Below are positions 5,245-55,208 of a DNA stretch of 64,000 bases, one piece after another (positions within the stretch are counted from its first letter, which is position 1; every line of letters begins with the position of its first letter). Made by a program: the position numbers and the translations under genes. Source of the stretch: Macrostomum lignano (taxonomy: Eukaryota); NCBI GenBank assembly GCA_002269645.1, contig NIVC01001733.1:1-64000 (forward strand), in the 5' to 3' direction. The notes below the pieces were generated by a model. The model saw only the letters and a list, made by a program, of their open reading frames with translations, made no database searches and was not told the origin of the DNA.

Positions 5245-5711
5245 ATGGCAGCCCAGAAAGAGCTGAGCGATCAACGCTCCGCCGAGTCCGTTCTGGTCAA
5301 AATTCACTTCCTAACCGACCAGGAGAAGGAAACCGTGGTCGAAGTGCTTCAGCGAAACGAGAAAATCCGGAAGCATGAAGCGGACAGGAAACGGTGAGTC
5401 GAGGTTGTTACGGTGATTGGTGCGCTGTTTGAAGACTTGAAACTCGATGCATGTAGGCTATGCTTGTTACAAAATTATGATTTCGTCTGCAGACGCCTGC
5501 AACAGGAGCTGGAGCGCTTGGAGTCCAGCTGCGCGGCTTCGCAGTCACCGTTGGCTGCCCTGACGCAGTCGTGTCCGCGCTGCGATGCCGCCCTCGCACT
5601 GCTGGTTCGGGCGCCTGCGACTGCTTCCTCTGCCGGCTGTCCGTCTGCAAGTCCTGCGCGCACCTCTTCCGGGACAGTCCTGTGCCTGTGCTCCGTCTGT
5701 TACCAAAAGCT
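5245..5711 (+). CDS. Slp exons 1-2: Rab-binding domain (SHD1) and FYVE-like zinc finger
   Basis: ATG 5245; donor GTGAGT 5394; acceptor CAG 5490-5492; donor GTGAGT 5712. The Cys pattern is reconstructed across two compensating frameshifts (ORFs 5413-5715 and 5571-5873). Confidence 0.85.
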
Positions 5712-8700
5712 GTGAGTCTATTCACGGCGCTAGGGACGTCGGGCTACGAGGTTGGGAGTATTGGGCTGCTGATTCTAGGACAAGAAGTTCAGGGTGTTCT
5801 CTTCTGGAGAAATAGTTTCTTATATTGTAAACTGTTGCTACCTGCTCGTTTCATTTTCTTCGAAAGTTTTTAATGTACTTTAACGGATTTTCTAGATCCT
5901 TTTTACTTTATAATTAATTCCTTTGACTTAGTCTCTCGGCTGACTCGGCACTGACGGCGTACGCATGGAGCATCTCGTCAAAGCTGTCAATGAGTGCCTA
6001 CAGCTACTCAATTAAAAAGCAGAAGCTGAAGGCGCAAATTTCTTGGATTTGATAATCCATCACGTGGGATTTAATTATTGTAAAAACTGCTGGCTCGAAG
6101 CTATTCCACTTTTCTTCCCATTACCTCCGTGCTGCAGGCTTTACGAAAGCAAAATTGGGAACTGGATGAACTTAAGAGCGTCATGATTGCGGCGGAGTCC
6201 TCGGTAGCAGCTGCTGCTGAAGACCGGACAGCGGACAGCGGCGACCTTCTGAGCGGCCTGATAATTAAACTGTCCGGTACGATTTTTTTTTTTTCATTTA
6301 AGACGCTCAAGTAAAAGGCCGCTGGTATTGAAGAGAAAGCAATACTAAAAAATGTGGAGCTGCTTTTGAATGCCAGTCGATCATCTCGCCTCATTGACCT
6401 TTAATAAGGAAATTGAGCTTCTTTTTCTTCTTTTATTTTCCAGGCACTTCGACCGGCGCAGACAAGGATGCGGCGGCAGGCGATGAGAGTTCGGTCTCCG
6501 TCGGCATGGCTGCCACCCCGCCAGCCCCCACCCCAGTTCGACAGTGGGAGCAGCCGGCGGCCACCTACCGGGTCTATCAGGTGTCGACTCGGCGCTTCGC
6601 TGACAGCCCACCGCCGCGACAGGTTGAAAAAGATGATGAAGAAGCGACTGGCGCTGCTGATGAGGCTGAGAGCGAAGCTGAGGAAGAGCAGGAGCTGTCC
6701 ATCGAAGAGAGAATGCGGCGACACTTAGAAGGCTCGCCCGGTGAGACTTCTTTTTTAGACAGCATTGACCATAGACTAGAACTCATCAAAACTTCTCTTT
6801 TATGCCAAAAACCAGCTACTCAGATGCTACTCAAGAGCTATACCAAATATTTTACTCGTTTTTGAGTGTCTATTGTGCACCGAATCACAGTGATTAGCAA
6901 GTCAGCTGTTTCGAACCTATTTACAGATATTGTGCAAAGACTCTGGGAGCACCAGGCCAAATGCGAGGCCAGTCTCACATCGTCAAACGATACTAAAAAC
7001 GGTGAGTAATAATTGGTTCTTGAGCTGAAAGCGGTGTCTAACAAAAAGTTACACATAGATGCGATCTAATTATGTAACTTTATTAACAGCTTTTTAACAA
7101 ACAAACTTTGAACTACTTAAACAAACTCACTACGAGTACATTTTAACCATCGCTCTTTGCAATCGCTTTTGCTTTCAAGTTTGCATAATTATATAGAGCG
7201 TGCGCCTCACCTTGCGTGTTAAGACGGGCTTTCCTGACACTGATCAGCAGGACTGATAAAGTTGTTGCTTAGTGAGCGCGCTTCGTTTAAACACGCGTTC
7301 CATCATCTTGATAAGGTACGTGTGGCTTGATCTCCAAAATTTTAAAAAGAGCTCCGTTGAACTACCAGTAACTAACTACCTGGAATTCCTATTGCGATCC
7401 ATTCCAGAATCAGCTGCGGTTGAAGAGGAGACCATCGTGTGCGTCACAAGTGAGAGGGCTCACTCAGAGATGCCCAAGAGAAACGAGAATTATTCATCTG
7501 ACGATGAGGTCGAGCTGGATCAGCAGGGTGGCGAGGTTATTCCAGCCGATGCGGACGATTTGACCCTTGTCGATGAACAGGCTGGACAGATTTCTCACCC
7601 GACTGACATGTCTGAAGCGACTGGTTCCCAGTTAGGAGAAGCTGGTGCGTTCTCTAGCGCTGATCAGAATCTCGAAACATCAGAATTAAGTTCCGAGTTG
7701 ACTTTAACCACAAGCGCTGAGCAGAGGCCAACCGTACCAGTTTGTGGCTCGATTCAACTTACGAACAAAGACTTTGATTCCACTGAATTCTTTTCTGACC
7801 AAGCCGAGTCGACCGAACCGTTTGACGCTGAAGCCGATAAAACATTTGCGGTGCGTGATCGTCAAAAGAATTTTGAGACATCAAGCGAAGAGCTGAATTT
7901 CACGGACGCTCCAGTCGAGGTCACCGTCGTGGGTGAACATCGGAAGACACAGATCACTAGTGGAAACTCCGATTATCTCTCGGACATGCTTAGCCAAAGC
8001 AAAAATACTGAGGATATTATTGTTGGCCCTGCTGACAGAGAGTCACTCGCAGCAGGCAAAGATCAGAAAAAAACTACAGTTGAAACTTCACAAGAGACTA
8101 TGGAAGGAGACTACGAGGTATCATTTCAACGTGAGTCATCGGTGACTCTTGTTCAAGACTCAGACGATCGAGCAGAAACAACAGAACAAGTTTCACAAAA
8201 TCTTGTTTCTTACGAGATCGAGCAGGTCTCTGGCTCGGAAGGTCAGCCAGCAGTGGAATTGCTCGTAGTTGACGAAAAGCAAAGTCTATATCCACTGACT
8301 TCAGCTCCTAATGTTGGTTCCACTCCAGGCACTGCTCACAGCATGTTTTTCGACTCTTTCAAAAAAGCAAATCCTCGGCAAGACGCCCAAGAGAACCAAA
8401 CTTTGCTATGCTTGGAGGGTGGCCCATCAAAGCAGCTCCCTGACGCTGAGATTCATGACAAAGTCGAAGAAGTTCGTGTTAGTCAGGAGCCCGTAATTGA
8501 GTTCAATCCGTCAGACTCTGCTGAGAACCTTGCAACACTGGAGCAATCAGATAAGTTTGAAGTTAAAGCTAACCGAAGCGAGCCGACGGAGAAAATTTTA
8601 GTCTCAAGACAGCAGACAAAGTCCTCTAAAACATTAGATCCACAAGACAGACCGCAGCCAGAAGCTATTGATTTTGATATTAAATTAGGTCTCTTGAAAC

Positions 8701-11700
8701 GTAGGCCAGCGGCTGTGGAGTCTCAAACGGAAGCAGAGCTGTGTGCCACCGAGCCCCCCGCTGAGGTAACAGTTGTGGATGCCAACCTGAGGACTCGAAT
8801 TCCTGAAATCAGTTTCAGAGAAGCCAGTGGAAACTCCGATGAACTTTCCAATGTGCTTAACCAATGCGAGAACTCCGAGGAAGTCGTTCGAGGACCTTCT
8901 AATAAACAGAATCTCGCCAAAAATAACAGAAATGGCGCTGGAGCAACTGATGCACTTGACAGCTCGCTGCAGGCCATACAAGGAGACTATGAGCGACCAG
9001 TTCATCGCTTTGCATCAGTTGCTCTTGCTGAAGACCAAGAGGAACGACCAGAGATACTCGACGAAATCTCACATCATCTTGTTCCATCCAGCGAAATCGA
9101 GCAGGTATCAGTTGCTGATTGGCGGCTAAAAATCGAAGATGGAGACCGCGATGACGAGTCGAGACTTGAACAACTGGCCTCGGCTCTGTCAGTAGACAAC
9201 TTCGCAGACACGTCGGTACATGGAAACTGTTGCGACTCTACAGAAAACCACTTGCACTGTTTGGAATGCCTGCTAGACTGTGGCGATCTTCCGAGGCAGC
9301 ATGCTAAAACTGAATATTCAAATGAAGTGCAAGAAGTTCTGGTCTGTCCAGAATCTGTTTCTGAGATCGAACCACCCGATACGGTAACTGGTGGTGAGCA
9401 GCCTGATTTAAGTGCCGAGCAGGATGTCACGTTTGAGAAAGTTCAGTTCAGAGATGAGCCAACAGAACCAAGTACTAGTGAGATGAGAACAGGATTTGTA
9501 ATAGAAGAGCCAACTGACGCCTTAGAAGACACGTCGGTACATGGAAACTGTTGCGACTCTAAAGAAAAAGCCAACCAAGAAGCACTTGAGGATGACCACT
9601 TGCACTGTTTGGAATGCCTGTTAGACTGTGGCGATCTTCCAATTAAGCATGCTAAAACTGAATATTCAAATGAAGTGCAAGAAGTTCTGGTCTGTCCAGA
9701 ATCTGTTTCTGAGATCGAAGTACCCGACACGATAACTGCTGGTAAGCAGCCTGATTTAAGTGCCGAGCAGGATGTCACGTTTGAGAAAGTTCAGTTCAGT
9801 GATGAGCCAACAGAACCAAGTACTAGTGAGGTGAGAACAGGATTCGTAATAGAAGAATCCAATGAACCACTTGACTCTGATGTGGACCTAAAGCTTTTAG
9901 GAGGCCATAGGAATGCTGAGACTCCTGGTGTAGATCAGGATATTGATGAGCCGCAAGTTGAGGTGACTGTTGTAGATGCTAGATTGAAGACGTTGATTCC
10001 TGATAGTGAGTTCCAAGCAGCTAGTGAAAACTCTGTCACGCTCACTGACATGCTCACTCAATGCGAAGACGCCACAGAAGTAGTTCATGGGCCTCGAGAT
10101 AGACAGACTCCGGTCAACGACAAGAAACTTGGTGGCATTGACGCACTGGACAGCTCGCTGCAGGCCATACAAGGAGACTATGAGCGACCAGTTCATCGCG
10201 ATGCATCAGTTGCTCTTGCTAAAGACCAAGAGGAACGACCAGAGATACTCGACGAAATCTCGCATCATCTTGTTCCATCCAACGAGATAGAGCAGGTATC
10301 AGTTGCTAAAGATGAGGGTCAGCTAAAAATCGAAGATGGAGACCGCGATGACGAGTCGAGACTTGAACAACTGGCCTCGGCTCTGTCAGTAGACAACTTC
10401 GCAGACACGTCGGTACATGGAAACTGTTGCAACTCTAAAGAAAAAGCCAACCAAGAAGCACTTGAAGATGACCACTTGCACTGTTTGGAATGCCTGTTAG
10501 ACTGTGGTGATCTTCGGAGTAAGCATGCTAAAATCGAAGATTCAAATGAAGTGCAAGAAGTTCTGGTCTGTCCAGAAACTGTTTCTGAGATCGAACCAGT
10601 TGGTAAGAAGCCTGATTTAAATGCTGAGCAGGATGTCACGTTTGAGAAAGTTCAGTTCAAAGATGAGCCAACGGAACCGAGTACTATTGAGATAAGAACA
10701 GGATTAGTACTAGAAGAGTCAACTGACGCCTTAGAAGACCCGTCGGTGCATGGAAACTTTTGCGATTCTACCGATACAGAAAAAGCCAATCAGGAAGCAC
10801 CTGATGATGAACACCTGCACTGTTTGGAATGCCTGTTAGACTGTGGCGATCTTCCGAGGCAGCATGCTAAAGCAGAAGAATCAAACGAAGTTCAGGAAGT
10901 TCTGGTCTGTCCAGAAACTGTTTCTGAGATCGAACTAGCTGGTGAGCAGCCTGATTTAAGTGCTGAGCAGGATGTCACGTTTGAGAAAGTTCAGTTCAGA
11001 GATAAGCCAACGGAACCGAGTACTAGTGAGGTGAAAACAGAATCCGTTATAGAAGAGACAACTGACACCTTTGCAGACACGTCGGTACATGGAAACTTTT
11101 ACGATTCTAACGGCACAGAAAAAGCCAATCAAGAAGCACCTGATGATGAACACCTGCACTGTTTGGAATGCCTGTTAGACTGTGGCGATCTTCCGAGGCA
11201 GCATGCTAAAGCAGAAGAATCAAACGAAGTTCAGGAAGTTCTGGTCTGTCCAGAATCTGTTTCTGAGATCGAACTAGCTGGTGAGCAGCCTGATTTTAGT
11301 GCTGAGCAGGATGTCACGTTTGAGAAAGTTCAGTTCAGAGATAAGCCAACGGAACCGAGTACTAGTGAGGTGAGAACAGAATCCGTTATAGAAGAGACAA
11401 CTGACACCTTTGCAGACACGTCGGTACATGGAAACTTTTACGATTCTAACGGCACAGAAAAAGCCAATCAAGAAGCACCTGATGATGAACACCTGCACAG
11501 TTTGGAATGCCTGTTAGACTGTGGCGATCTTCCGAGGCAGCATGCTAAAGCAGAAGAATCAAACGAAGTTCAGGAAGTTCTGGTCTGTCCAGAATCTGTT
11601 TCTGAGATCGAACTAGCTGGTGAGCAGCCTGATTTTAGTGCTGAGCAGGATGTCACGTTTGAGAAAGTTCAGTTCAGAGATAAGCCAACGGAACCGAGTA

Positions 11701-14700
11701 CTAGTGAGGTGAGAACAGAATCCGTTATAGAAGAGACAACTGACACCTTTGCAGACACGTCGGTACATGGAAACTTTTACGATTCTAACGGCACAGAAAA
11801 AGCCAATCAAGAAGCACCTGATGATGAACACCTGCACAGTTTGGAATGCCTGTTAGACTGTGGCGATCTTCCGATTAAGCATGCTAAAACTGAAGAATCA
11901 ATAACTGCTGGTGAGCAGCCTGATATTGGTGCCGAGCAGGATCTCACGTTTGAGAAAGTTCAGTTCAGAGATGAGCCAACGCAACCAAGTACTACTTATG
12001 TGAGAACAGGATTCGTAATAGAAGAATCCAATGAACCACTTGACTCTGATGTGGACCTAAAGCTTTTAGGAGGCCATAGGAATGCTGAGACTCCTGATGC
12101 AGATCTGGATATTGATGAGCCGAAAGTTGAGGTGACTGTTGTTGATGCTAGATTGAAGACGTTGATTCCTGATAGTGAGTTCCAAGCAGCTAGTGAAAAC
12201 TCTGTCACGCTCACTGACATGCTCACTCAATGCGAAGACGCCACAGAAGTCGTTCATGGACCTCGAGATAGACAGACTCCGGTCAACGACAAGAAACTTG
12301 GTGGCATCGACGCACTGGACAGCTCGCTGCAGGCCGTACAAGGAGACTATGAGCGACCAGTTCATCGCGATGCATCAGTTGCTCTTGTTGAAAAACAAGG
12401 GGGACGACCAGAGATACTCGACGAAATCTCGCATCATCTTGTTCCATCCAGCGAAATCGAGCAGGTATCAGTTGCTGATTGGCGGCTAAAAATCGAAGAT
12501 GGAGACCGCGATGACGAGTCGAGACTTGAACAACTGGCCTCGGCTCTGTCAGTAGACAACTTCGCAGACACGTCGGTACATGGAAACTGTTGCAACTCTA
12601 AAGAAAAAGCCAACCAAGAAGCACTTGAAGATGACCACTTGCACTGTTTGGAATGCCTGTTAGACTGTGGTGATCTTCGGAGTAAGCATGCTAAAATCGA
12701 AGATTCAAATGAAGTGCAAGAAGTTCTGGTCTGTCCAGAAACTGTTTCTGAGATCGAACCAGTTGGTAAGAAGCCTGATTTAAATGCTGAGCAGGATGTC
12801 ACGTTTGAGAAAGTTCAGTTCAAAGATGAGCCAACGGAACCGAGTACTAGTGAGGTGAGAACAGGATTCGTACTAGAAGAGTCAACTGGCACCTTCGCAG
12901 ACACGTCGGTACGTGAAAACTGTAGCGACTCTAAAGAAAAAGCAAGCCAAGAAGCACTTAAGGATGACCATTTGCACTGTCTGGAATGCCTGTTGGACTG
13001 TGGCGATCTTCCAATTCAATGTCTTCACGATGATCGTAAGACCGAAATTAAGGAAGAGGAATTTAATGACAGAGTCCTAATTAACAATCCAAGAACTTTA
13101 CAGCGGAATGAAGCAGAAAATGAGTTCGGGATTCAGACAGAAGTATCCGTAGAATCAGTCGTCAGCTTTCTTGACGCGGACGATTTCACGATGGAACAGA
13201 GGCGCTCTGCATCGGATAAGGAACACCTGAAAGTTTCAGCAGGCCAAACTGAGGTCACTCCCGAGGCTGAAGAGACACTTGATTCCGTAGTCAGTCTACT
13301 TGCCACTGAAGATCTGTTGCTAGAAAAAGCTGATGATCAACTTCCTGAAGTAGTGGATGGTGTAGAAGTTTCTGTTCCGAAAAAAGAACCTGTCAACAGG
13401 AGCGCAGATGGGAAAGAGTCTTTACAGGTGGATGAAATTGTGTGCCTTCTTGATCACAACGACCTATCTACTCAACACGGTGACGATCAGATCTGCAGCT
13501 TGAAGCACACAACCTTGAAACCTTCAGATTCCGATTTATGATCGAGAAGAGTCTGGATATTGCGCAGCAAACAATTGAGTCTGAAAATTACAAACAGGAA
13601 ATGGTTGAAAGTGTAGAAACGTCGCAGCCACTCAGCGATACAACTGACTCAAAAATCCGCTATTCTGCATCAGTTGATATGGAAGCTAACTTTGTTGCTG
13701 GTAAGAGTGAAGCGGTTAGTGTTCCAACACCGGAGGGTAATGTCTCAGAAGCCAGTTTAAATTTAGGCTCCAGGGCTGACAGACAAGAGTTGATCAAGCT
13801 ATCAAGCAACGACTTGGAGTCACTGTTTGAAATCGCATCGGATTTTGATATCAGACACATTAGATCGCGACTAAGTCCCATTGAAGAATTCGATTCCAGA
13901 GTCGCTGTGGAAGAGGAAAGGGTCGATTGCACTTTTAGCAACGAAAGCAATAATCGTAAAACTTTTGTCGAACTTCCCTGCAACTACACTGGAAGCGCAG
14001 AAGCTCTGACATCAGTGCTTTTGGATACACTTAACTGTGAGCAGGAAGTGGAGCACCCGGAATCAAGCTCATATTCGTCGTCGAGAACTACCGGCCAACA
14101 CGCAGAGACTCTGGCTAAATTAGCTGAGTCGCTTGAAGCAACTGAGACAGTAGATGACACTCCGGTAAATGTTGGCAGTTGTGCAGTCTTTAGTACTAGA
14201 GATGAGACATCAAAAGCACTCGACAAGGTTTTAGACTCGATGCAGAGTCTTCTACCAGAGGAAGACACTGAAGAAGTGGCCGCTCCGGCTGGCTCTTATT
14301 TAGTGGACAATCCAGACCCCGACGCCGCTGCTCAGCTGCTCAGTAACCTGGCTGATGCTATGGATGACTCATCTGAGAAGCCGGTTCCGCCAGATAGGGC
14401 TCTATGCAAATGTGACTCTGGCAGGTTTGTTCTTGAGGAAGCCGCAGCTCAGCTGGAGAGCTTTCTAGACGATAGCGACATCGTGCTGCCATCAAAATCA
14501 AGTGATGCTCTCGTTGACCCGGTTTTCGATGAAGAGCAAGTACAGCCACCACAAGGAGCTGCGGACGGCGCACCCCCAGCGTTTGATCTTGGTCACAGGA
14601 GTCCAGAAGACAGGAGCCCCCCTGAACCAATGGTGTCGTGGGACAGTTTGAACCGCCAAGTCTCACTACCCTGCCAGACTTTGGGCTTGACGAGGACATC

Positions 14701-17700
14701 GAGACCAGAGACGAGTCGAAGGTGAAAGAAGAGGATCAAACTAAAGATCGGCTGCAGGAAGCCGCGGAGCTGCCTGGTGCAGTCCAAGGTTCCAGCGATT
14801 ACGAAGCAGAAAAGGCCGGAGAATCAGGGGCAGCATCACCAGAACAATCTTCTGGCTGCATCGATTTAGCAACAACCGGTCAGGCTTCACCAGCAGTCCC
14901 GCCCGAGTTCGTTATTGTTGCCGATTCTGAGGGGCCATCAACCGCTAAAGGAGAAGCGGCTGCAGTCCAGCTTGGCATGCAGTTAGGCATCGGCGATCCC
15001 GATGCCACGACCAGCGGTAGGCGCTCTCCGATGTGGATGCCACCACAGCCGCCGAGATCGCCGACTGCGATGTCCCGACTTGAGCTAGAGCTTTTGGACC
15101 GGTCCGTGTTTTTCCCACGAGTTCGCAGCGCCGAAGACGTTGGATCTTCGTCTGACAGCGCCGGCCAGCAGGAGGAGGTCAGCAAGGACAGTGACGGGGA
15201 CGACGATGACAGCTGGGTCGATCCGCATGAGTATCGGCCCAGCAAGCGGTCGCACTACAATCCGATTGTGCCTCGGCTCGACCTCGGCGACCTCAGCCGA
15301 TCCTTGTCCTGTGAGGCCAATATTGACAGCGCCGGAAGTGACGAACCAGCAACTCCGATGGCACCGCGAGCTCCACCGGCAGCTGTACGGGAGCTCGCGG
15401 CCGCCGCTGCAGCCGCTGCCGCTGCGAGAACGCCTCGGGTGCCTCCTCAACGACAGGCCTCGCAGCCTCATCCAATTTTGCATCAAAATCCGCGTAATCT
15501 GGAGCAGCAGCAACAGCAGCAGCAACAGCAGAAGCCGCCGATGTCAGCGCCACCTGGGCCCAAGTTTGGTGGCTATGGGGCACCGAACTGGGGCAATGTG
15601 ATCCAAGAGCTAAAAGGAAAGCCACGACCGGAGCCAGTGCGCGCCTATCAACCCACCTGGTCGTCTGGGGAGCCTACAAAGCGAACGTCGGCCTTTGCGT
15701 CACAGGGCAGGCAGCAAATAGAGACAGCCATCAGCCAGCTGCGGCCCCGCCCGAGCTCCTTGCATGTGGCTCAGAGGGTCGGGCAGCCCTTGCAGCAGCA
15801 GCAGCGGACTCTCTCACCCGGTCCGCAGTCTTCACAGTTGCAGGATCTGCTACCGCCGCCAACCCTGCCGAAGCCCAAATGCCCGACCAGGCCGCATCCA
15901 ATGGCGGCTGCCAGTAAAAGGTAAATTTTCTAATTGCACTGGGTCCTAGATATTCCTAGATACCCTCAGTACCCCTAGTGCGAGCATGCTTCTCTTTAGT
16001 GTATGGGAGTTTCCATCACCGCGCGTGACCGCATGCTGTTTCCTGGAAAATCCCAGAATAGGCTTTTGTTTCAACTCGAATAAACTTGGCCCTCCATTCC
16101 GGTCTCCGCATGACTCCGGGTCGGACGAGCTCTGGCCGGGAAATAGGGGGGGGGGGCTAAAAATAGTCTTTGAGGCAGCGAACTCGGCTTCTGCTTCAAG
16201 CTGCGCAAAAACTGAAAGCAATATGAAAGTTTGCTTTTCTGCTTCTTCAAGGCCACGGAGCACTGATCAGAGGCAGCGGGTTATTCCGCAATAAAAAGCG
16301 ACTATGAATTTCCTCGAGTCCTGGCCGCAGAAGCAGCAAGCAGACGGAGTCACGCGCTCACTGAGCACTCTGCCGTAGAAAGACTTCCCTTAGTGGTTTT
16401 TTAAGCTTCAGCTGTAGCTGAATGAGACATCTTAGAAGCATCTTGTCAAATTAATTAAAATGTAGTCTGAGTTCACTGACCCAGAGGTTGAGTCCAGTTA
16501 GAAGCATCAATAGAAAAAATTTCTCCTTTTTGCCTGAGCTGAGTGGCAGCTGCAATATTAAACTATGAACTCAGCCATGAGCTTATAATGGTTCTTTCCA
16601 GCAGACAAGCGCTGCCCGAGGTCATGTCTGAGGCTCCCACCGAGTCAGGCGCCATCGTACAAATGAGACAGCAGCGCTCCGACTCGAGCCGCGATGAGCC
16701 GGACCAAATCGCTGAGAAGCCTGTCGGCGATTCTGAGAACCAGCCAGCCGAGGCTGACCAGCCGCAGCTGCAGGATGTTCAGGAACGCGCTAAAGTACTC
16801 GAAGCTGAACAATCTGGGATCACGGAGAGGGAAGCGTCTCAATCGGATGAAAATAAATCAGCTGTCTCAGCGGGTGAGCTCAGTCTCGTCTCTCAGCCAG
16901 CCACCACTGATGCTGAGCTGGCAGTTATCCAAGCTTCTGCTGTGAGCAACGAGCTGCCATCAATTACAGCTGAGCCAGAAGCAACTGGCAAAATGCAGGA
17001 GCTGGTGTCTGCTGCACCCGCAGCTGAAGTATCTTCAGACTTACCTGTTAGTGTCGCGTTATCGGAGGGCGCAGCAACTTCCACACACGGGATTGAGCCA
17101 CAAGCGGCTGCTGACTGTGCGGCAACAGCAGAGGAAGGGCCGCCAACGGCCGAGGAGGAGCTGCAGGCCCTCGCAGAGCTGCTCTCGGTGGAGCCGCAGG
17201 AGGCCAAAACTATCTCAGACGCGCTGGCCGGCAGAGGGAAGCAGCCGAAATCCGAGGAGGAGAAACTCTTCGAACGGCTGGACAAGACGGAGGGACTGTC
17301 TGAGGAGGAGCTGGTGAAGGTGGCCCAGCTGATGAACATGGACCAGGAGACTGCCAAGGCCGTGGCTCGGTTCCTCATCACTCAGCAACCTGGCGATGAT
17401 GAAGCCGAAGACGAGGAAACCGAAGCGGACACCGAGAACCTGGATGAGACTGACACCACTGTGGACACCGAGTGGGAGCGACTGCAGCAGCGGTACTTCG
17501 ACGACCCGGACGAGTTCCGGTTTGTGCGACCTCTCCGCGACGCTGCCGGTACGCGCGATGGCGCCGAGTCGAACGTCAGCCGAGGCTCCTCCGGTGCCAC
17601 TGGTAGCGACATTCGGCAACGAATGCGCGAATTCGGCGACCTTCTGCTCGGCTTCGACAACCCCATTTCCGACGACGCCTCGGTCGGTGACGACGCCACC

Positions 17701-20700
17701 TCGGAGCGCAGCTTCGACGTTGATTCGATGCGCTTCCGCTTTGAGCGGCTAATGAGCTTCTCCGACAGAGCCTCGGTTGTTTCATCGGACCGGACGAGCC
17801 TCGCGCCCTCATCTGCTAGCGGGACGCACCGACGACGTCGCGTGGGAGCCAGAAGCGTCTCGAGAACATCCTCTCAGGCCAGCAGTCTCGCCCCATCTGC
17901 TGCTGTCGCTGCAGCCAACGCTGCGGTCTCGTCTGGAGAGACGCCCGCACCGGTGCAGGCAGTTGGCCGGCCTGTGCGGCGTGCCCAGTCGGACGCTCTG
18001 CGCAATGCGTCCCAGCTGCAGCAGATCGTCCAGATCAAGCGCATGATCGAGCGCCGTCGCCAGCAGCAGTCTCAGGCAGCGCCGACATCAGCTGCCGACA
18101 GTCAGGAATCGCCGACAGAGCATTCAACCTCTGCCGCCCAACACCGCATTTCAGAAGACAACCGACCGCCAGCGGCCTATCGCCCGGGTTCACCGTCGCC
18201 TCCTTCACTGCCGCCTCCGACTGTGTTTGTTGAAGAGACGCCCTCGGACGATGGCGCGGATGCTGTCGAGGCCTTCAAGAAGCCGACACCAGTCGCTGAG
18301 GATTCTGCAACCAACACTGCGGAAGTTATGCCGAAGGAGGAGCTGGCGACGGAGTCTTCGTCCCAGCAGCCGCCGGCTGGCGAGATTCGCCTGTCGGTGT
18401 CCCCGGCCGCAGGAGGTGCCCTGACGGTACACGTGATTGAGTGCCGCGGCCTCCGAGTTGGTGATGCCAGAAAATCTCGGACCGACAGGTGAGCAAGGAA
18501 CCGGGATGTTTTTTTTCAGAAAAAAATAACTCAGGAAAAAGTTTTGCAGGACAAACAGCTTCGCTGGCGACAGACTAACATAAGAATGACAAATTGCTGC
18601 AGCCGGTGCGGCAGTTTCAGCTGACTGATACTAAGCCCCCCACTCCCTGTCGGACTCAAGCGGATGTGCTCATCGATTTGCCGCTAAGCCCGCAGCTTAT
18701 GCGGAGTCGCTACACGAGCGACTGTCATGATTGACCCGCAGCCACTCTGCCGAATAAATTTATGAGTTCCGGATACCCGCTCGGCCCTGGCAGCGCTCCA
18801 AGTGCGTTTGCGAGCGTCTGCTCCTTGGCTCGCCCATAGGGTTCGCCTGCAGATAAAATAACTTTAATTAATCGAACTCCAAATAACTGAAGCCAACTGC
18901 AGCACCAGGGGCTGGAGAGAGTGCGAGAGAGGACGGGGCCTGTTAGCCGACAATTTCTTTCCGAGTGACAGTTGAAGCAGAAGAGAAGCGCCTGTTTTAG
19001 GCTTCTCATGTGAGCCTGGCCAGGGAGTTTCAGAGAGAGAATATGGCTTCTCATGTGAGCCTGGCCAGGGAGTTTCAGATGGAGAATCTGGCTTCTCATG
19101 TGAGCCTGGCCAGGGAGTTTCAGATGGAGAATCTGGCTTCTCATGTGAGCCTGGCCAGGGAGTTTTAGAGGGAGAATCTGGCTTCTCATGTGAGCCTGGC
19201 CAGGGAGTTTTAGAGGGAGAATCTGGCTTCTCGTGTGAGCCTGGCCAGGGAGTTTTAGAGGGAGAATCTGGCTTCTCGTGTGAGCCTGGCCAGGGAGTTT
19301 CAGATGGAGAATCTGGCTTCTCATGTGAGCCTGGCCAGGGAGTTTTAGAGGGAGAATCTGGCTTCTCGTGTGAGCCTGGCCAGTGAGTTTCAGATGGAGA
19401 ATCTGGCTTCTCATGTGAGCCTGGCCAGGGAGTTTTAGAGGGAGAATCTGGCTTCTCGTGTGAGCCTGGCCAGGGAGTTTTAGAGGGAGAATCTGGCTTC
19501 TCATGTGAGCCTGGCCAGGGAGTTTTAGAGGGAGAATCTGGCTTCTCGTGTGAGCCTGGCCAGGGAGTTTCAGATGGAGAATCTGGCTTCTCATGTGAGC
19601 CTGGCCAGGGAGTTTCAGATGGAGAATCTGGCTTCTCATGTGAGCCTGGCCAGGGAGTTTCAGATGGAGAATCTGGCTTCTCATGTGAGCCTGGCCAGGG
19701 AGTTTTAGAGGGAGAATCTGGCTTCTCGTGTGAGCCTGGCCAGGGAGTTTCAGATGGAGAATCTGGCTTCTCATGTGAGCCTGGCCAGGGAGTTTCAGAT
19801 GGAGAATCTGGCTTCTCATGTGAGCCTGGCCAGGGAGTTTCAGATGGAGAATCTGGCTTCTCATGTGAGCCTGGCCAGGGAGTTTTAGAGGGAGAATCTG
19901 GCTTCTCATGTGAGCCTGGCCAGGGAGTTTTAGAGGGAGAATCTGGCTTCTCGTGTGAGCCTGGCCAGGGAGTTTCAGATGGAGAATCTGGCTTCTCATG
20001 TGAGCCTGGCCAGGGAGTTTCAGATGGAGAATCTGGCTTCTCATGTGAGCCTGGCCAGGGAGTTTCAGATGGAGAATCTGGCTTCTCGTGTGAGCCTGGC
20101 CAGGGAGTTTTAGAGGGAGAATCTGGCTTCTCGTGTGAGCCTGGCCAGGGAGTTTTAGAGGGAGAATCTGGCTTCTCATGTGAGCCTGGCCAGGGAGTTT
20201 CAGATGGAGAATCTGGCTTCTCATGTGAGCCTGGCCAGGGAGTTTCAGATGGAGAATCTGGCTTCTCGTGTGAGCCTGGCCAGGGAGTTTTAGAGGGAGA
20301 ATCTGGCTTCTCGTGTGAGCCTGGCCAGGGAGTTTTAGAGGGAGAATCTGGCTTCTCATGTGAGCCTGGCCAGGGAGTTTCAGATGGAGAATCTGGCTTC
20401 TCATGTGAGCCTGGCCAGGGAGTTTCAGATGGAGAATCTGGCTTCTCGTGTGAGCCTGGCCAGGGAGTTTTAGAGGGAGAATATGGAGCGGAGGGCTCCA
20501 TCGCTTATCCACTTTTTGAGGAGTTCAATACCCAGATTACTGCATAATTCCCCGAGCAAGTGTGCAAGCTAATGAGGGAGAATTATTTTGAAGTTTCTTT
20601 CAAATTCTTCTCTTGAAGGAATTTTTTCAAGTCTACCGTTGTTAAAATGAGAAATGAGTCCCCAGTCCCAGTTGATCTGCTTTCTGTCCAGATTTGCATC

Positions 20701-23700: not shown

Positions 23701-26700
23701 TAATGAGCTCGCCCTGCTCCGCTACTCCGCTCCCCATCCTCCGTAGACTCCGGAGACTTTTGCTCACTGGAGAAAACATGAGCTGGAGCTGGGGTTTTCT
23801 CGGCCTTATTAATCATTTTTGTTATTACTCTGTCACAAGACTCAAGCCTTCAGATGAGACAGGGGGGGCGAACTCGAGAAGCGAAATCGAATTTACTGAG
23901 TTGCATCGCACGAATGGTTTATTTATTCACAGTTTTATTGAGTGTTTTGCTTAACTATTACTCACAGTAGACACAAAGCAAAATTAATGCGTTTTGCTAA
24001 AACTGTTTTAGCTACGCCAAGCTGCTTTTGCTGCCTGACCGCCTGAAGAAGAAGACTAAAGTGAAAAAGAACACGGCTAATCCTGTGTTCGACGAGTCGT
24101 TTAAGGTGAGTTCCCTGGTTGCAGTGCTCATTCAGGAGTGCCGCATGGAATTCAAGATAGCTTATAAATGGGCATTGAATTCCTGAGCTCGTTCTCATTC
24201 CCTCTGTCCCTCTTCGTTTTATAATCAGTTTTTGTTCTGGCAAACAAGCAGACCCTGCGTTAAAGACATGACGGAAATACGGGGGATCGGGGGATGCTTT
24301 CTATCTGGGGTATGCTTGCTATCTGGGGGATGCTTGCTATCTGGGGATGCTTGCTATCTGGGGATGCTTGCTATCTGGGGGATGCTTGCTATCTGGGGAT
24401 GCTTGCTATCTGGGGGATGCTTGCTATCTGGGGATGCTTGCTATCTGGGGGGTGCTTGCTATCTGGGTGGATGCTTGCTATCTGGGGGATGCTTGCTATC
24501 TGGGTGGATGCTTGCTATCTGGGGGATGCTTGCTATCTGGGTGGATGCTTGCTATCTGGGGATGCTTGCTATCTGGGTGGATGCTTGCTATCTGGGTGGA
24601 TGCTTGCTATCTGGGTGGATGCTTGCTATCTGGGTGGATGCTTGCTATCTGGGTGGATGCTTGCTATCTGGGGGATGCTTGCTATCTGGTGGATGCTTGC
24701 TATCTGGGTGGATGCTTGCTATCTGGGTGGATGCTTGCTATCTGGGGGATGCTTGCTATCTGGGGGATGCTTGCTATCTGGGTGGATGCTTGCTATCTGG
24801 GGGATGCTTGCTATCTGGGGATGCTTGCTATCTGGGGGATGCTTGCTATCTGGGGGATGCTTGCTATCTGGGTGGATGCTTGCTATCTGGGGGATGCTTG
24901 CTATCTGGGTGGATGCCTGTTGCCTTTGTGAAACCTTTATTTTTGTGTACTTTTGTTACTTTTAGAAAAAGAGATTCATAACAAACGCCTTTGTCCATGA
25001 CAATTTTACTCGAATAAGGTGATTTATGAAACCGAAGAAGGAATCGGTTCTTAAGAAAAAGTGCTTTTTAATGGATTTGCTTGAATAATTTTTGCTACTT
25101 GCTTATTGGGCGCCCCAAAGGGGGGCACTAGATTGCTAGCACTGTTTCTCATAGTGAATTGTCCGTCTACCTGGATGGAGTGCATTCGTCTGGAGCAACT
25201 TTGTCTATGGCAAAACTCCATTTAGCCCCATTCCTTATAGCTTTTTCTAAGATATGTTTGCCAAAGTAATGGAGCTTTTGTCTGTGGTATCAAGGCGTAT
25301 CTAACACAGACAAAAAACGTATCTTGCATTAAATTCAATGCGCGTAGGCCCAAATGGGCTGCAAAAAGCTATATTTTATATTGTTATTACTTTCATCCAA
25401 TGCTCTCTGCGGCCTTCCAGTTCCCCGCGCCGACTTCGCCGCGGCCGGCCAGCCGCCAGCTGCTGGTCTCCGTGTGGCAGAGCACCGACTTCCTGCAGTC
25501 GGACCAGCTGCTCGGCGACTGCCGCGTTGACCTCGGCTCGCGGCCGGCTTCGACGCAACCCAGCTGGCACCAGCTGGGCTGCCACTCCAGACGGTCCTCC
25601 AGCAGGAGGCGTCACAGCAGATCAGCGGCGAGCTGGTCGTGGCCGTCAGGCTGGCTGGCGAGGAGCTGCAGGTCCTGGTGAAGGAGGCGCTCGGCTTGGC
25701 GAGCTTCCGGCCAGCGATGGAGCCGTTTGTGAAACTGTAAGAGGAACTGAAACCTGCGCTGCTGAAATACCCGATAATTCCCGGAAATTCTCCCACTCTC
25801 AGCATCTGCAATCTGGGGCCGACCGAGCGCCATCTCCATCGCGAAGGTGTCCGGTGGCCACAGTATTTTTGGACTTGTCGAGCGGTCCATGAGGACCAAT
25901 CCCCTCCATGAGGACCAATCCCCTCCATGAGGACTAACCCCTCCATGAGGACCAATCCCCTCCATGAGGACCAACCCCCTCCATGAAGACCAACCCTCTC
26001 CATGAGGACCAACCACCTCCATGAGGACCAACCCCCTCCATGACCAATTCCCTTACATGAGGACCAACCCCCTCCATGAAGACCAATCCCCTCCATGAGG
26101 ACCAACCCCCTCCATGAGGACCAATCCCCTCCATGAGGACTAATCCCCTACATGAGGACCAACCCTCTCCATGAGGACCATTGACCAACCCCCTCCATGA
26201 AGACCAATCCGCTCCATGACCGATCCCCTCCATGACCAACCACCTCCATGACCAATTCCCTTCCATGAGGACCAACCCCCTCCATGAAGACCAATCCGCT
26301 CCATGACCGATCCCCTCCATGACCAACCACCTCCATGACCAATTCCTTTCCATGAGGACCAATCCCCTCCATGAGGACCAACCCTCTCCATGAGGACCAA
26401 CCACCTCCATGAGGACCAACCCCCTCCATGACCAATTCCCTTACATGAGGACCAACCCCCTCCATGAAGACCAATCCCCTCCATGAGGACCAACCCCCTC
26501 CATGAGGACCAATCCCCTCCATGAGGACCAACCCCCTCCATGAGGACTAACCCCTCCATGAGGACCAACCACCTCCATGAGGACCAACCCCCTCCATGAC
26601 CAATTCCCTTACATGAGGACCAACCCCCTCCATGAAGACCAATCCCCTCCATGAGGACCAACCCCCTCCATGAGGACCAATCCCCTCCATGAGGACTAAT

Positions 26701-51003: not shown

Positions 51004-51176
51004 TGTAGTGTGCGTACGCACATTATGGTACGCCCGGGCAGTCTGATTGGCTGCGGAGTGGGGTGGGTGCCGCCACCCCAATTCTAACTCCATAATATAT
51101 AGACGCGTGCCCAGCGCGGCGAGATTTGTAAGAGTTTGGCTACACAGCAAACACGGCCTCTGACTCAGTTACTACA
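51004..51176 (+). repeat. 5' LTR (173 bp)
   Basis: TG...CA termini; CCAAT (CTGATTGG) and TATA-like (TAATATATA) motifs. Confidence 0.97.
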
Positions 51177-51208
51177 ATGGCGTCGCAAGAACTGAACCTT
51201 TAAAAATC

Positions 51209-53401: not shown

Positions 53402-55208
53402 GCAGCTGAAGCGCAGCATCGCGGAGCCGACAACGCTGGCTTTTTACGACAAGCGGCTACACACGCAGCTGATTGTGGACGCGGGGCCGACCGGACTGGG
53501 CGCCATCCTGGCGCAGGTGCAGCGCGACGGCAGCTCAAGGCCGGTTGCATACGCCAGCCGGACCCTCTCCGATGTCGAGCGGCGATATTCGCAGACCGAG
53601 AAAGAGGCACTCGCCGTGAAGTTCGGCTGCCTGAAGTTTGAGTACTACCTGCATGGATCGCCCCAGTTCACAGTGGTCTCTGATCACAAGCCGCTGACGG
53701 CCATTTTCGCGCCTGGGTCGCGGCCGCCTCCACGAGTCGAGCGAATGGCGCTGAGGATCCAGCACCTAGTGTTCAAGGTCGAGTATCAGCCGGGAGCCTC
53801 CAATGCTGCAGATGTACTCAGCAGGCAGCCCCTAAACGAGCACGACGGAAGTTTTGGCGAGCAGCGGAGGGAGGCCTACATCAACGAGGTGGCGCAGGCG
53901 GCTGTGCCGATGGCGCTGACACTCCAAGACATCCGCAAGAGCTCTGCCAGCGACCCAGTCATCCGGGCGGCGATAGCGGCGACGCAAGGCGGTCGGTGGG
54001 ATCGCTCCAACCCCGAGATGCGCTCGCTCCACGCGCTGCGAGAGGAGCTGTCTGCGGTTGACGGGGTCCTCCTTCGACACCACCGAATCGTCGTGCCAGC
54101 TGATCTGCGGCAGCAGATGCTCGAATTAGCGCATCAAGGGCACCAGTGCTCGCAGAAGACGATCGCCAGACTCTGCACGAAGGTCTGGTGGCCGAGGATG
54201 GCAACTCAAGTGGAGGAATTCGTCAGTCGATGCCGCAGCTGCGCCGTCACGTCGCACACGCCAGCCGTCCGGGCCACGCCTCTGCAGCCGACGCCGATCC
54301 CCGCGGGCGCCTGGCTGTCGATCGGCGCCGATTTCGTGGGACCCATCAACAACAACATGCTGCTGGTGTGCGTGGACCGCTACTCAAGGTTTCCGGAGGT
54401 GCAGCTCATGCAGACGACGACGGCCGAGGCATTGATTCCCCGCCTGCGAGAGATGTTCGCCCGCTTCGGGATCCCACAGGAGCTCGTGACAGATAATGGA
54501 CCACCCTTCTCGTCCAAGGAGTTCGGCCGGTTCCTGGCGAGCTACGGGATCAAGCACCGCCTCATCACGCCCTACTACCCAGCGTCCAACGGCATGACAG
54601 AGCGACTGAACCGCTCCATCAACAAAGTCGTGCGAGCAGCCATCCAGGAGCGGCGGGACTGGAGGACCGCTCTGGACGAGTGGCTGCTGGCCTACAGGAA
54701 CACGCCGCACACGGCCACCGGGCGCGCACCAGCCGAGCTGCTGATGGGCCGGCGGCCAAACGACATCATCCCCGCCGCCCGGCCGTCCCAGCGAGTCCAC
54801 ATCAACGAGCAGCGGCTGAGAGAAGCCGACGCTGGCGCCAAGGCGGCGATGAAGCAGCACGCGGACGCAAAAAGGCGACCACGGCGGCACGACATCCAGG
54901 TCGGCGAATCGGTGCTACGACGGCGGGTCGGTGCCAGCAAGACGCAGACGCCATTCGAGAGCGGTGCCTGGACAGTCCAGCGGGTGGCCGGCAACTCGCT
55001 GCTGCTACGCCGGGACGGCACGACCTGCTGGCGGCACTGCACGGCGGTCAAAGTCATCAGCCCCGACTTGGCCGACGCCGGCGCCCAGACGCAAACCGCT
55101 GCACCGAGAGCTTCGGGCGAGGTGGCCCGAGATCCACCCGCCTCCCCCGTGGCGCTGCGCCCGCACCCCCGCGCTGCTCGGGCGGGCGTGAAAATCTACA
55201 AGGACTGA
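53390..55208 (+). CDS. pol part 2: RNase H and integrase
   Basis: AFEQLK...LIVDAGPTGLGAIL...RYSQTEKEALAV; HHCC AHQGH...CRSC; DDE motifs IGADF, VTDNG, MTERL. Confidence 0.92.

What the first reader, a model, noticed from the sequence alone, without database searches (positions are those of the whole stretch)
9200..13030. Unrecognised 113-aa Cys/His repeat (HGNCC...HLHCLECLLDCGDL...VLVCPE), a candidate metal-binding module inside a Rab effector
Seen: nine copies of H-L-H-(C/S)-L-E-C-L-L-D-C, most preceded by HGN(CC/FC/FY)(D/N)S and followed by VCPE, in an otherwise Glu/Asp/Ser/Thr-rich sequence. I do not recognise it as a named domain. Clustered His/Cys in a cytosolic protein suggests Zn or other metal coordination, or S-acylation (inference). 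Two adjacent copies share a C-to-S change.
Basis: partly seen in the sequence, partly recalled or inferred. Interest (0 to 1): 0.7.

Follow-up and report, generated by a model that had tools for sequence, protein, structure and literature searches.

The report
Repeated Cys/His peptide in flatworm Rab-effector linker
A flatworm (Macrostomum lignano) synaptotagmin-like Rab effector has, in its long disordered acidic linker, a recently amplified 113-residue repeat in which only a 14-residue peptide (HLHCLECLLDCGDL) is held constant, so it looks like a species-specific array of short docking (or possibly metal-binding) peptides and not a new folded domain.

Summary
Nine copies of H-L-H-(C/S)-L-E-C-L-L-D-C lie in one open frame at window 9249-13010, with a 339-nt (113-aa) period.

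The gene is a Macrostomum lignano Slp/rabphilin-type Rab effector: an N-terminal RabBD (PF02318), one giant acidic exon (window 7408-15920, about 2,839 codons), and two C-terminal C2 domains. The repeat lies in the linker.

It is not a domain by any test available:
- No Pfam or PDB match.
- No homologue in 1.84 billion representative proteins or in the word-indexed collection.
- AlphaFold2 predicts disorder (pLDDT 59 and 41), with only a low-confidence helix over each core in the super-repeat model.

The array is young and varies in copy number: units are up to 99.7% identical, and gene copies carry 9 or 4 cores.

Constraint is confined to the 14-residue core, which has 1 non-synonymous and 6 synonymous changes (ratio about 0.04). 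The rest of the unit has 72 and 21 (about 0.94). The flanking "CC" and "VCPE" vary or are lost. Older, degenerate motif copies keep the Leu/Asp pattern but not the His/Cys.

Best reading: a multivalent array of a short helical peptide motif in a disordered linker, partner unknown. Metal binding or S-acylation by the core is neither supported nor excluded. Interest is modest.

The parts
5245..6180 (+). RabBD (SHD1, Zn finger, SHD2) exons of the gene, starting at ATG 5245. Exons lie at about 5245-5393, 5493-5712 and 6139-6281. The window copy has 1-2-base gaps at 5608, 5679 and 6173 relative to contig C3937.
   Evidence: tblastn of public model P0001 onto the window. Pfam FYVE_2/PF02318 E=9.7e-16, 58.5 bits, cut-off 27.2. 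PDB melanophilin 2ZET E=3.9e-12 and rabphilin-3A 1ZBD E=6.7e-7. Indels.
7408..15920 (+). Giant linker exon of about 2,839 codons, acidic (pI 4.3, D+E 21%). It is one continuous frame on sister contigs C3937 and C2297. In the window it is broken by single missing bases at 13534 and 14631.
   Evidence: ORF lists. Indels. Canonical AG/GT splice sites at both ends. Composition. dN/dS about 0.5 between gene copies.
7857..8666 (+). Oldest super-repeat copy (36% identical to the younger ones). It holds a spacer module plus the decayed 'unit 0' at 8334-8594, whose core reads TLLCLE-----GG.
   Evidence: HMM of the unit finds it at exon aa 359-445, conditional E=9.9e-6. Super-repeat alignment A2.
9192..9857 (+). 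Units 1 and 2 (107 and about 115 aa). Cores at 9249-9290 and 9597-9638.
9858..10388 (+). Spacer module, copy 3 (EVTVVDA...GDYERPVHR...EILDEISHHLVPS.EIEQVS...RDDESRLEQLASALS). Copy 2 is at about 8760-9191 and copy 4 at about 12027-12551.
10389..12026 (+). Units 3-7. Cores at 10473-10514, 10812-10853, 11151-11192, 11490-11531 and 11829-11870. Units 6 and 7 carry Cys->Ser at the fourth core residue. Unit 7 lacks the VCPE segment.
12552..13064 (+). Units 8 and 9. Cores at 12636-12677 and 12969-13010. Unit 9 is the most divergent (72-80% nt identity) and is truncated after the core, yet its core is 14/14 identical to the consensus.
13158..13466 (+). Three degenerate motif copies just after the array: VVSFLDADDF (13158-13187), VVSLLATEDL (13287-13316) and IVCLLDHNDL (13437-13466). 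A fourth, LESFLDDSDI, lies at 14453-14482.
   Evidence: Regex scan: 4 observed against 0.009 in shuffles, but the pattern was defined post hoc. Weak HMM match for the third, E=0.015. Coordinates.
16602..18488 (+). Next exon (linker continues). Its end begins C2A (..LTVHVIECRGLRVGDARKSRTD).
24007..28687 (+). Remaining C2A and C2B exons: about 24007-24105, 25460-25737 and 28346-28684, then stop TGA at 28685-28687. The frame changes between 25579 and 25630; this was not resolved.
   Evidence: Pfam C2 E=7.3e-18. PDB synaptotagmin-3/-1, Slp4, rabphilin and RIM2 C2 domains. Coordinates.

Best explanation
The region is a young tandem amplification that varies in copy number. It lies inside the intrinsically disordered, highly acidic linker of a Macrostomum lignano synaptotagmin-like/rabphilin-type Rab effector (RabBD, linker, C2A-C2B).

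The functional element is not the 113-aa unit but a 14-residue peptide, H-L-H-C-L-E-C-L-L-D-C-G-D-L. It probably forms a short amphipathic helix with three faces: Leu (L2, L5, L8, L9), Cys (C4, C7, C11) and acidic (E6, D10, D13).

Nine near-identical copies, plus up to four older degenerate ones, would make the linker a multivalent docking platform for an unknown partner. That partner would sit between the Rab-bearing vesicle (bound through the RabBD) and the target membrane (bound through the C2 domains). This parallels other family members, whose central regions carry partner-binding sites.

Shown: the gene architecture, the repeat anatomy, its youth and copy-number variation, predicted disorder, and peptide-level constraint confined to the core.

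Inferred: helix formation, docking function and multivalency. The partner is unknown.
For: Architecture:
- RabBD matches PF02318 above the cut-off; best solved relatives are melanophilin and rabphilin.
- C2A and C2B are present.
- Public records name the protein 'RabBD domain-containing protein', M. lignano.

Disorder:
- AF2 of the unit gives pLDDT 59, pTM 0.12 and no secondary structure.
- AF2 of the super-repeat gives pLDDT 40.6, with isolated helices at residues 201-214 and 317-329, over the cores at 205-218 and 318-331.
- The exon has pI 4.3 and GRAVY -0.7.

Constraint limited to the core:
- The core has 1 non-synonymous and 6 synonymous changes; the rest of the unit has 72 and 21. Ratios are 0.04 and 0.94, Fisher p=0.0014.
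- The core is the most extreme of all 14-column windows.
- Unit 9 matches the consensus at 14/14 core positions and 25/46 flanking positions, p=0.001.
- Poisson P(<=1 | 9.9 expected) = 5.7e-4.
- All non-ligand residues of the core (L, E, L, L, D, G, D, L) are as invariant as the His/Cys.

Older copies:
- The downstream degenerate copies share phi-x-[CS]-phi-L-D-x-x-D-phi but not the His/Cys.

Youth and copy number:
- Units are up to 99.7% identical.
- Gene copies carry 9 cores (C1733, C3937) or 4 (C2297), differing by exactly one super-repeat.

Family precedent:
- The Slp4 linker binds SNARE proteins (PMC7857503, abstract).
- Drosophila Bitesize carries a Moesin-binding exon between its ends (PMC10153138).
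Against: - No partner is known, and the peptide matches no catalogued linear motif that I could verify.
- The motif occurs in no other gene of the genome, so there is no independent recurrence.
- No orthologue from another species could be examined, so conservation rests on paralogous repeats within one species.
- The core was chosen because it is invariant, so part of the statistics is post hoc. The invariant-run test alone gives P=0.087.
- The single-unit AF2 model shows no helix, and the helices in the super-repeat model have pLDDT below 50.
- Homology of the degenerate downstream motifs to the core is weak (E=0.015; the regex was defined after seeing them).
- No transcript evidence was available that all units are in the mature mRNA; public gene models drop some or all of them.
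Confidence: 0.45

Rival explanations
1. Metal-binding peptide array. H-x-H-C-x2-C-x3-C would bind Zn2+, or Cu+/Cd2+, either within one core or by bridging two cores or two molecules. This would give metal-dependent compaction or clustering of the linker.
For: - H31, H33, C37 and C41 are invariant in all 9 window units and in the 4 units of the C2297 copy, despite synonymous divergence.
- 45 of the exon's 63 Cys and 45 of its 67 His lie in the repeat region.
- C-x2-C and C-x3-C spacings are used by known metal sites (general knowledge).
Against: - The non-ligand residues of the core are equally invariant, which is unusual for a pure ligand motif.
- The other Cys/His of the unit vary (CC->FC/FY/CS, H10->R, C34->S, H48->C, VCPE lost).
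- The decayed unit 0 and the four degenerate downstream motifs lack the His and most Cys.
- No Zn-binding family in Pfam or PDB matches.
- No compact fold is predicted.
- If helical, H3, C7 and C11 lie along one face at i, i+4 and i+8, too far apart to share one metal ion within a single helix (geometry, inference).
Confidence: 0.2
2. The repeat is a neutral by-product of unequal crossing-over in a tolerant disordered linker. The core looks conserved only because of gene conversion or the youth of the copies, and it has no specific function.
For: - Units are very similar (84-99.7% nt), and copy number differs between gene copies.
- The non-core part evolves at a ratio of about 0.94.
- The repeat is confined to one species in all the data searched.
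- The invariant-run test alone gives P=0.087.
Against: - The core carries the highest density of synonymous differences in the unit (6 in 14 codons) and only one amino-acid change. Youth or gene conversion would remove synonymous differences as well.
- Unit 9 has diverged to 54% amino-acid identity in the flanks while keeping 14/14 in the core.
Confidence: 0.17
3. S-acylation (palmitoylation) cluster. The three cysteines per core (27 in all) would be lipidated and pin the linker to the vesicle membrane, in the manner of cysteine-string protein.
For: - The cysteines are clustered and flanked by leucines in a protein that works at membranes.
- Precedent from memory: cysteine-string protein, SNAP-25 and the synaptotagmin juxtamembrane cysteines in the exocytic machinery.
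Against: - The context is strongly acidic (E, D, D within the core; unit pI 4.1). Known acylated clusters usually sit in hydrophobic or basic contexts (general knowledge).
- C34 is replaced by Ser in two units.
- This does not explain the invariance of His, Glu, Asp and Gly.
- Nothing here tests it directly.
Confidence: 0.1
4. Assembly artefact or non-coding sequence. The array would be a mis-assembled satellite, or would lie in an intron.
For: - Both contigs carry 1-base indel errors.
- Public gene models treat part or all of the array as intron.
Against: - The array lies in an 8.5-kb frame with no stop on three contigs.
- The copy-number difference is exactly in frame.
- dN/dS is below 1 along the exon.
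- Codon-level constraint on the core is protein-level.
Confidence: 0.03

Closest known systems
Synaptotagmin-like proteins / rabphilin (Slp1-5, granuphilin, rabphilin-3A; the exophilin family of Rab27/Rab3 effectors)
   Same: Same domain order: an N-terminal RabBD with a Zn finger (PF02318; best PDB matches melanophilin and rabphilin), a central non-conserved linker, and C-terminal C2A-C2B. In Slp4 the linker is the partner-binding part (PMC7857503, abstract).
   Different: The linker is more than 3,000 residues, most of it in one 8.5-kb exon. It holds a nested tandem repeat with a Cys/His/Leu/acidic 14-mer that was not found in any other protein searched.
Drosophila Bitesize (Btsz), the fly Slp-family protein
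   Same: It is an invertebrate Slp-family protein with long central exons between its ends and the C2 domains. One of those exons is a partner-binding module, the Moesin-binding domain in exon 8 (PMC10153138; PMC3945880, abstract).
   Different: No sequence similarity of the linker was detected. No orthologue was recovered by the RabBD search among long proteins. Btsz is not reported to have a Cys/His repeat (my reading of those papers only).
Arrays of short linear motifs in disordered regions of endocytic adaptors (e.g. the DLL/DLF clathrin-binding repeats of AP180 and epsin; from memory)
   Same: It would work alike: many copies of a short Leu/Asp-containing peptide are embedded in an acidic, unstructured, fast-evolving scaffold and give multivalent weak binding.
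   Different: The peptide is different and longer, is rich in Cys and His, and is restricted to one gene. No partner is known, and membership was not tested.
FFAT / FFAT-like motifs (E-F-F-D-A-x-E in an acidic tract, binding VAP; from memory)
   Same: One degenerate downstream copy, S-F-L-D-A-D-D (window 13164-13184), fits the FFAT-like pattern. All copies have phi-L-D-x-x-D in an acidic tract.
   Different: The nine cores have Cys at position 1 and Leu instead of Phe/Tyr at position 2, and other copies have His, Thr or Asp at position 5. No scoring matrix was available, so this is only a lead.
Cysteine-string protein and other S-acylated Cys clusters of the exocytic machinery (from memory)
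   Same: Clustered cysteines occur in a cytosolic protein attached to secretory vesicles.
   Different: There are only 3 Cys per 14 residues, the context is acidic, and there is no J-domain. Acylation was not tested.

Membership tests
Slp/rabphilin-type Rab effectors (exophilins) | N-terminal Rab-binding domain (SHD1, Zn finger, SHD2; Pfam PF02318) | tested here: met
   Pfam FYVE_2 E=9.7e-16, 58.5 bits against a cut-off of 27.2, covering profile positions 3-114 of 118. PDB melanophilin RabBD E=3.9e-12 and rabphilin-3A RabBD E=6.7e-7. The domain maps to window 5245-6180.
Slp/rabphilin-type Rab effectors (exophilins) | Two C-terminal C2 domains | tested here: met
   C2A: Pfam C2 E=7.3e-18 and PDB synaptotagmin-3/-1 E about 1e-15. 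C2B: PDB Slp4 C2 E=2.9e-6 and RIM2 E=1e-4; this is weaker, and Pfam reported only one stretch.
Slp/rabphilin-type Rab effectors (exophilins) | Binds GTP-bound Rab27/Rab3/Rab8 | not testable with these tools
   This needs a binding assay.
Structural Zn-binding domain (zinc finger, knuckle or ribbon) | Four Cys/His ligands conserved in every copy | tested here: inconclusive
   H31, H33, C37 and C41 are invariant in the 9 + 4 young units. They are lost in unit 0 (core TLLCLE-----GG) and in the degenerate downstream motifs.
Structural Zn-binding domain (zinc finger, knuckle or ribbon) | Match to a described Zn-binding family or solved structure | tested here: not met
   Pfam on the whole ORF gives only sub-threshold junk such as DUF3139 and DUF6299. 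The PDB profile search has a best E of 0.09, to a halophilic L7Ae.
Structural Zn-binding domain (zinc finger, knuckle or ribbon) | Compact fold around the ligands | tested here: not met
   AF2 gives pLDDT 59 with pTM 0.12, and pLDDT 40.6 with pTM 0.14. No tertiary structure is predicted. Caveats: the alignments are shallow, and AF2 does not model metals.
Structural Zn-binding domain (zinc finger, knuckle or ribbon) | Stoichiometric metal binding | not testable with these tools
   This needs ICP-MS, a PAR assay or Co2+ titration.
Short linear motif / molecular recognition feature in a disordered region | Island of constraint of about 15 residues or fewer in fast-evolving flanks | tested here: met
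   The dN/dS-like ratio is 0.04 in the core and 0.94 in the rest. The core is the most extreme 14-column window, and unit 9 matches at 14/14 against 25/46. Poisson P=5.7e-4. The core was defined post hoc.
Short linear motif / molecular recognition feature in a disordered region | Disordered sequence context | tested here: met
   AF2 models. Composition: pI 4.1-4.3, D+E 21-26%, GRAVY about -0.7 to -0.8.
Short linear motif / molecular recognition feature in a disordered region | A defined partner domain, or recurrence of the motif in unrelated proteins | tested here: not met
   The motif is found only in this gene's four copies in the genome and in no other protein. The partner cannot be tested here.
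FFAT-like motif | Seven-residue core E-[FY]-[FY..]-D-[AC]-x-[ED] with an acidic flank | tested here: inconclusive
   By inspection only. SFLDADD (13164-13184) fits. The nine cores (CLLDCGD) have Leu at position 2, and other copies fail at position 4 or 5. No scoring matrix was available.

The most novel reading that the evidence does not exclude
The 14-residue core is a previously undescribed metal- or redox-responsive helical clasp. Pairs of cores, within or between molecules, would be bridged by Zn2+ (or oxidised to disulfides) through the His/Cys stripe. The giant linker of this Rab effector would then compact or cluster on secretory granules in response to cytosolic Zn or redox state. That would be a new way of regulating vesicle tethering length or effector condensation.
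Probability: 0.1. Interest if true: 0.6.

Novelty: new variant of a known kind. Interest (0 to 1): 0.3.

Why it matters
If the core is a real binding peptide, this protein is a natural example of evolution tuning the valency of a Rab effector's linker by unequal crossing-over: copies in the same genome carry 9 or 4 cores. The 14-mer would also be a compact handle for fishing out an unknown partner in regulated secretion. The worm can be studied experimentally; from memory, RNAi, transgenesis and prominent secretory/adhesive glands are available in M. lignano.

If the core binds metal instead, it would be an unusual cytosolic Cys/His peptide array on a vesicle tether.

As it stands it is a lineage-specific repeat in a disordered linker. 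Such repeats are common, so the general significance is limited. A practical point is that public gene models of this locus are wrong: they drop repeat units and carry frameshifts from assembly indels.

Tried and rejected
1. Known-domain match. Pfam on the whole ORF and a PDB profile search gave only sub-threshold, composition-driven hits.

2. Homologues of the unit:
- The exhaustive HMM search gave three marginal hits (E about 5e-4 to 1e-3). All are unrelated repetitive proteins without the motif.
- M. lignano's own protein was not recovered in that search either, probably because its cluster representative is a model without the repeats. This negative is therefore weaker than it looks.
- A word-indexed search with two units found nothing. 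A search with ORF residues 500-900 found only the two M. lignano models.

3. Orthologous giant Slp proteins, sought through the RabBD among proteins of 1,581-5,031 aa: only the query itself was found.

4. Other RabBD genes in the genome. Two further families exist, each in three copies, but they are different genes and I did not follow them up.

5. Self-BLASTP for repeat architecture returned only the identity hit. I replaced it with anchor-based splitting and MAFFT.

6. Hydrophobic moment of the core as a helix is 0.89, against 0.78 for shuffles, which is not significant. The amphipathic-helix idea rests on the residue pattern and the low-confidence AF2 helices only.

7. A test on the longest invariant run alone gave P=0.087, so I do not rely on it.

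8. Literature. No paper mentions Mlig029417. No M. lignano paper on Slp or rabphilin was found.

9. Motifs I considered by eye and rejected as poor fits: clathrin box (L-phi-x-phi-[DE]), arrestin-type [LI][LI]GxL, LIR, SIM, the paxillin LD motif, acidic dileucine, and CDGSH. KVQF in each unit fits the PP1 RVxF pattern, but I cannot distinguish that from chance.

Full report
**1. Observation**

The + strand frame 7260..13541 is open for 2,093 codons and contains H-L-H-(C/S)-L-E-C-L-L-D-C nine times. The copies start at nt 9249, 9597, 10473, 10812, 11151, 11490, 11829, 12636 and 12969.
- Eight copies are preceded by HGN(CC/FC/FY)(D/N)S; the ninth has RENCSDS.
- Seven are followed by VCPE.
- Units 6 and 7 share a TGT->AGT Cys->Ser change.
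- Tandem Repeats Finder gives a 339-nt period at 10392-11901 (4.5 copies, 94% matches).
- The region is acidic and rich in Ser/Thr (D+E 24.6%, S+T 14.3%). It holds 45 of the exon's 63 Cys and 45 of its 67 His.

A ~170-aa spacer module (EVTVVDA..GDYERPVHR..EILDEISHHLVPS.EIEQVS..RDDESRLEQLASALS) alternates with runs of 2, 5 and 2 units of 107-113 aa. An older fourth copy of the whole super-repeat, 36% identical, lies upstream at 7857-8666.

**2. Organism and gene**

The window is contig C1733 of a 764-Mb, 5,269-contig assembly. The word-indexed protein search identifies the product as Macrostomum lignano BOX15_Mlig029417g1, a 'RabBD domain-containing protein'.

The public model's N-terminus maps to window 5245-6180. 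It scores above Pfam's cut-off for PF02318, the rabphilin/Slp Rab-binding domain (E=9.7e-16). Its best solved relatives are the RabBDs of melanophilin (2ZET, E=3.9e-12) and rabphilin-3A (1ZBD, E=6.7e-7).

Downstream exons encode C2A and C2B.
- C2A: Pfam C2 E=7.3e-18, and PDB synaptotagmin-3/-1.
- C2B: PDB Slp4 C2 E=2.9e-6, and RIM2.
- The stop codon is at 28685.

Splice sites are canonical. The repeat sits in one giant exon, 7408-15920, followed by exon 16602-18488. So the gene has the Slp/rabphilin architecture and the repeat lies in the central linker. 'Rab effector' is supported by architecture; Rab binding itself was not tested.

**3. Gene copies and assembly state**

The unit is found on four contigs only.
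- C3937 is 99.85% identical to the window. There the exon is one continuous 2,888-codon stop-to-stop frame (about 2,839 of those codons lie within the spliced exon).
- The window's frame breaks come from single missing bases at 13534 and 14631. More missing bases lie in the RabBD exons (5608, 5679, 6173).
- C3937 in turn lacks a base at window position 17137. This explains the garbled C-terminus of the public model.
- Indels in both contigs, mostly in short homopolymers, point to long-read assembly errors and not to pseudogenes.
- C2297 is about 98% identical. It has an intact 2,163-codon exon with only four cores and lacks exactly one super-repeat of 723 residues. The array therefore changes by in-frame unequal crossing-over.
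- dN/dS between C3937 and C2297 is about 0.5 all along the exon (0.43 before the repeats, 0.56 in them, 0.61 after them). This is weak purifying selection, as expected for a disordered linker.

**4. Is the unit a domain?**

No test supports a domain.
- Pfam gives only sub-threshold noise on the ORF.
- A PDB profile search has a best E of 0.09, to an acidic archaeal L7Ae.
- An HMM of the nine units, run against 1.84 billion representative proteins, gives three hits at E about 5e-4 to 1e-3. All are unrelated repetitive proteins without the motif.
- Word-indexed searches find only the two M. lignano models.
- Caveat: the exhaustive library did not return the M. lignano protein itself. Close relatives could be hidden behind representatives that lack the repeats.
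- AlphaFold2 gives pLDDT 59 and pTM 0.12 for the unit, with no secondary structure.
- For the 400-residue super-repeat it gives pLDDT 40.6 and pTM 0.14. That model has only isolated helices. Two of them (residues 201-214 and 317-329) lie over the two cores (205-218 and 318-331).

**5. What is constrained**

In a codon alignment of the nine units, the 14-codon core has at least 6 synonymous changes and 1 non-synonymous change (C34S). The remaining columns have 21 synonymous and 72 non-synonymous changes. Per site the ratios are 0.04 and 0.94, Fisher p=0.0014.

The core was noticed because it is invariant, so I also ran less biased checks.
- A scan of all 14-column windows ranks the core first, with the fewest non-synonymous and the most synonymous changes.
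- The most divergent unit, u9, matches the consensus at 14/14 core positions and 25/46 flanking positions (p=0.001).
- The longest-invariant-run test alone is not significant (P=0.087).
- At the rate seen in the rest of the unit, 9.9 non-synonymous changes are expected in the core and 1 is seen (Poisson 5.7e-4).

Synonymous differences are concentrated in the core, so neither youth nor gene conversion explains the invariance. Selection acts on the peptide.

**6. Older copies**

- The unit HMM finds a decayed 'unit 0' at exon residues 359-445 (window 8334-8594, conditional E=9.9e-6). It keeps L-x-C-L-E but has lost both His, and a 5-residue deletion removes C-L-L-D-C.
- Just after the array are VVSFLDADDF, VVSLLATEDL and IVCLLDHNDL(STQH). 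LESFLDDSDI lies further on (window 13158-13466 and 14453-14482).
- These share phi-x-[CS]-phi-L-D-x-x-D-phi with the core, but not H31, H33 or C41.
- The loose pattern occurs 4 times in the non-repeat part, against 0.009 in shuffles. The pattern was written after seeing those instances, so this is suggestive only.

**7. Mechanism**

The best-supported reading is an array of short peptide motifs in a disordered linker, each probably a short amphipathic helix. Plotted as a helix, the residues fall on three faces (angles):
- L2, L5, L8 and L9 form one face.
- C4, C7 and C11 form an adjacent stripe.
- E6, D10 and D13 form the opposite, acidic face.

Nine to thirteen copies would give multivalent binding of an unknown partner between the Rab-bound vesicle and the membrane bound by the C2 domains. 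This fits family precedent: the Slp4 linker binds SNARE proteins (PMC7857503, abstract), and Bitesize carries a Moesin-binding exon (PMC10153138).

I put this at 0.45. The rivals are:
- Metal binding by the core, 0.2. The four candidate ligands are invariant in the young copies. Against it, the non-ligand residues are equally invariant, older copies lose the ligands, no fold is predicted and no known family matches.
- Neutral expansion, 0.17. The synonymous/non-synonymous contrast argues against it.
- S-acylation, 0.1. The acidic context is atypical, and it was not tested.
- Artefact or intron, 0.03. The frame is open on three contigs, and the constraint is at codon level.

**8. Comparison and novelty**

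The gene is a new member of the Slp/rabphilin family. The repeat is an undescribed feature of its linker that appears to be species-specific. The core peptide occurs in no other gene of the genome (23 hits, all in this gene's four copies, control 0) and in no other protein found.

I class it as a new variant of a known kind. Lineage-specific repeats in disordered linkers are common and no cross-species evidence exists, so interest is modest (0.3). The sharply delimited, Cys/His-rich constrained 14-mer is a clean target for the experiments listed under next steps.

Noticed in passing
window 5608, 5679, 6173, 13534, 14631 (missing bases); window 17137 (base missing in C3937): Two 99.85%-identical contigs of the same gene each carry isolated 1-2-base deletions inside coding exons, mostly in short homopolymers. 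They are probably long-read assembly errors. They break the RabBD and the giant exon in the window, and they give the public protein model a frameshifted C-terminus.
   Followed up: partly
window 25579-25630: The reading frame changes between the end of C2A (..SWHQL) and the start of C2B (..SGELVVAV) with no obvious intron. This is either a further indel or a very short intron. No sister contig covering this stretch was fetched.
   Followed up: no
public models P0001 (2,875 aa) and P0002 (1,255 aa) compared with window 9192-13064: Public gene models drop repeat units as if they were introns. P0001 keeps 6 of the 9 cores and P0002 keeps none. The repeat is therefore under-represented in protein databases. 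This probably explains why the exhaustive search did not even recover the species' own protein.
   Followed up: partly
G000:C2297:14005-20493 compared with window 7260-15921: A third copy of the gene, about 98% identical, lacks exactly one super-repeat (723 residues) and has 4 cores instead of 9. This is an in-frame copy-number difference between homeologues or alleles.
   Followed up: yes
window 19000-20486, 21123-21562, 21607-23094, 24289-24916, 25886-28154: The introns between the linker exon and the C2 exons are packed with large minisatellites: 45 nt x33, 41 nt x11, 26 nt x57, 18 nt x35 and 19 nt x121. Several give long spurious open frames.
   Followed up: partly
window 51164-55208 (+): Two long ORFs of a Ty3/gypsy-type LTR retroelement, with CCHC zinc knuckle, reverse transcriptase, RNase H and integrase domains. 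A second, degraded integrase-like stretch follows at about 55.5-56.7 kb.
   Followed up: partly
window 76-1992 (+): The upstream neighbouring gene encodes a polycystin-type cation channel (PF08016, E=1.2e-20).
   Followed up: no
each unit, e.g. window 11337-11348 (KVQF): Every complete unit contains F-E-K-V-Q-F, which fits the PP1-docking RVxF pattern [RK]-[VI]-x-[FW]. The segment has few changes of any kind, so constraint cannot be told apart from youth.
   Followed up: no
G000 contigs C1659, C151, C297 and C3641, C37, C2900: Two other RabBD (PF02318) gene families are present, each in three copies. This fits the partly triplicated genome of this species.
   Followed up: no
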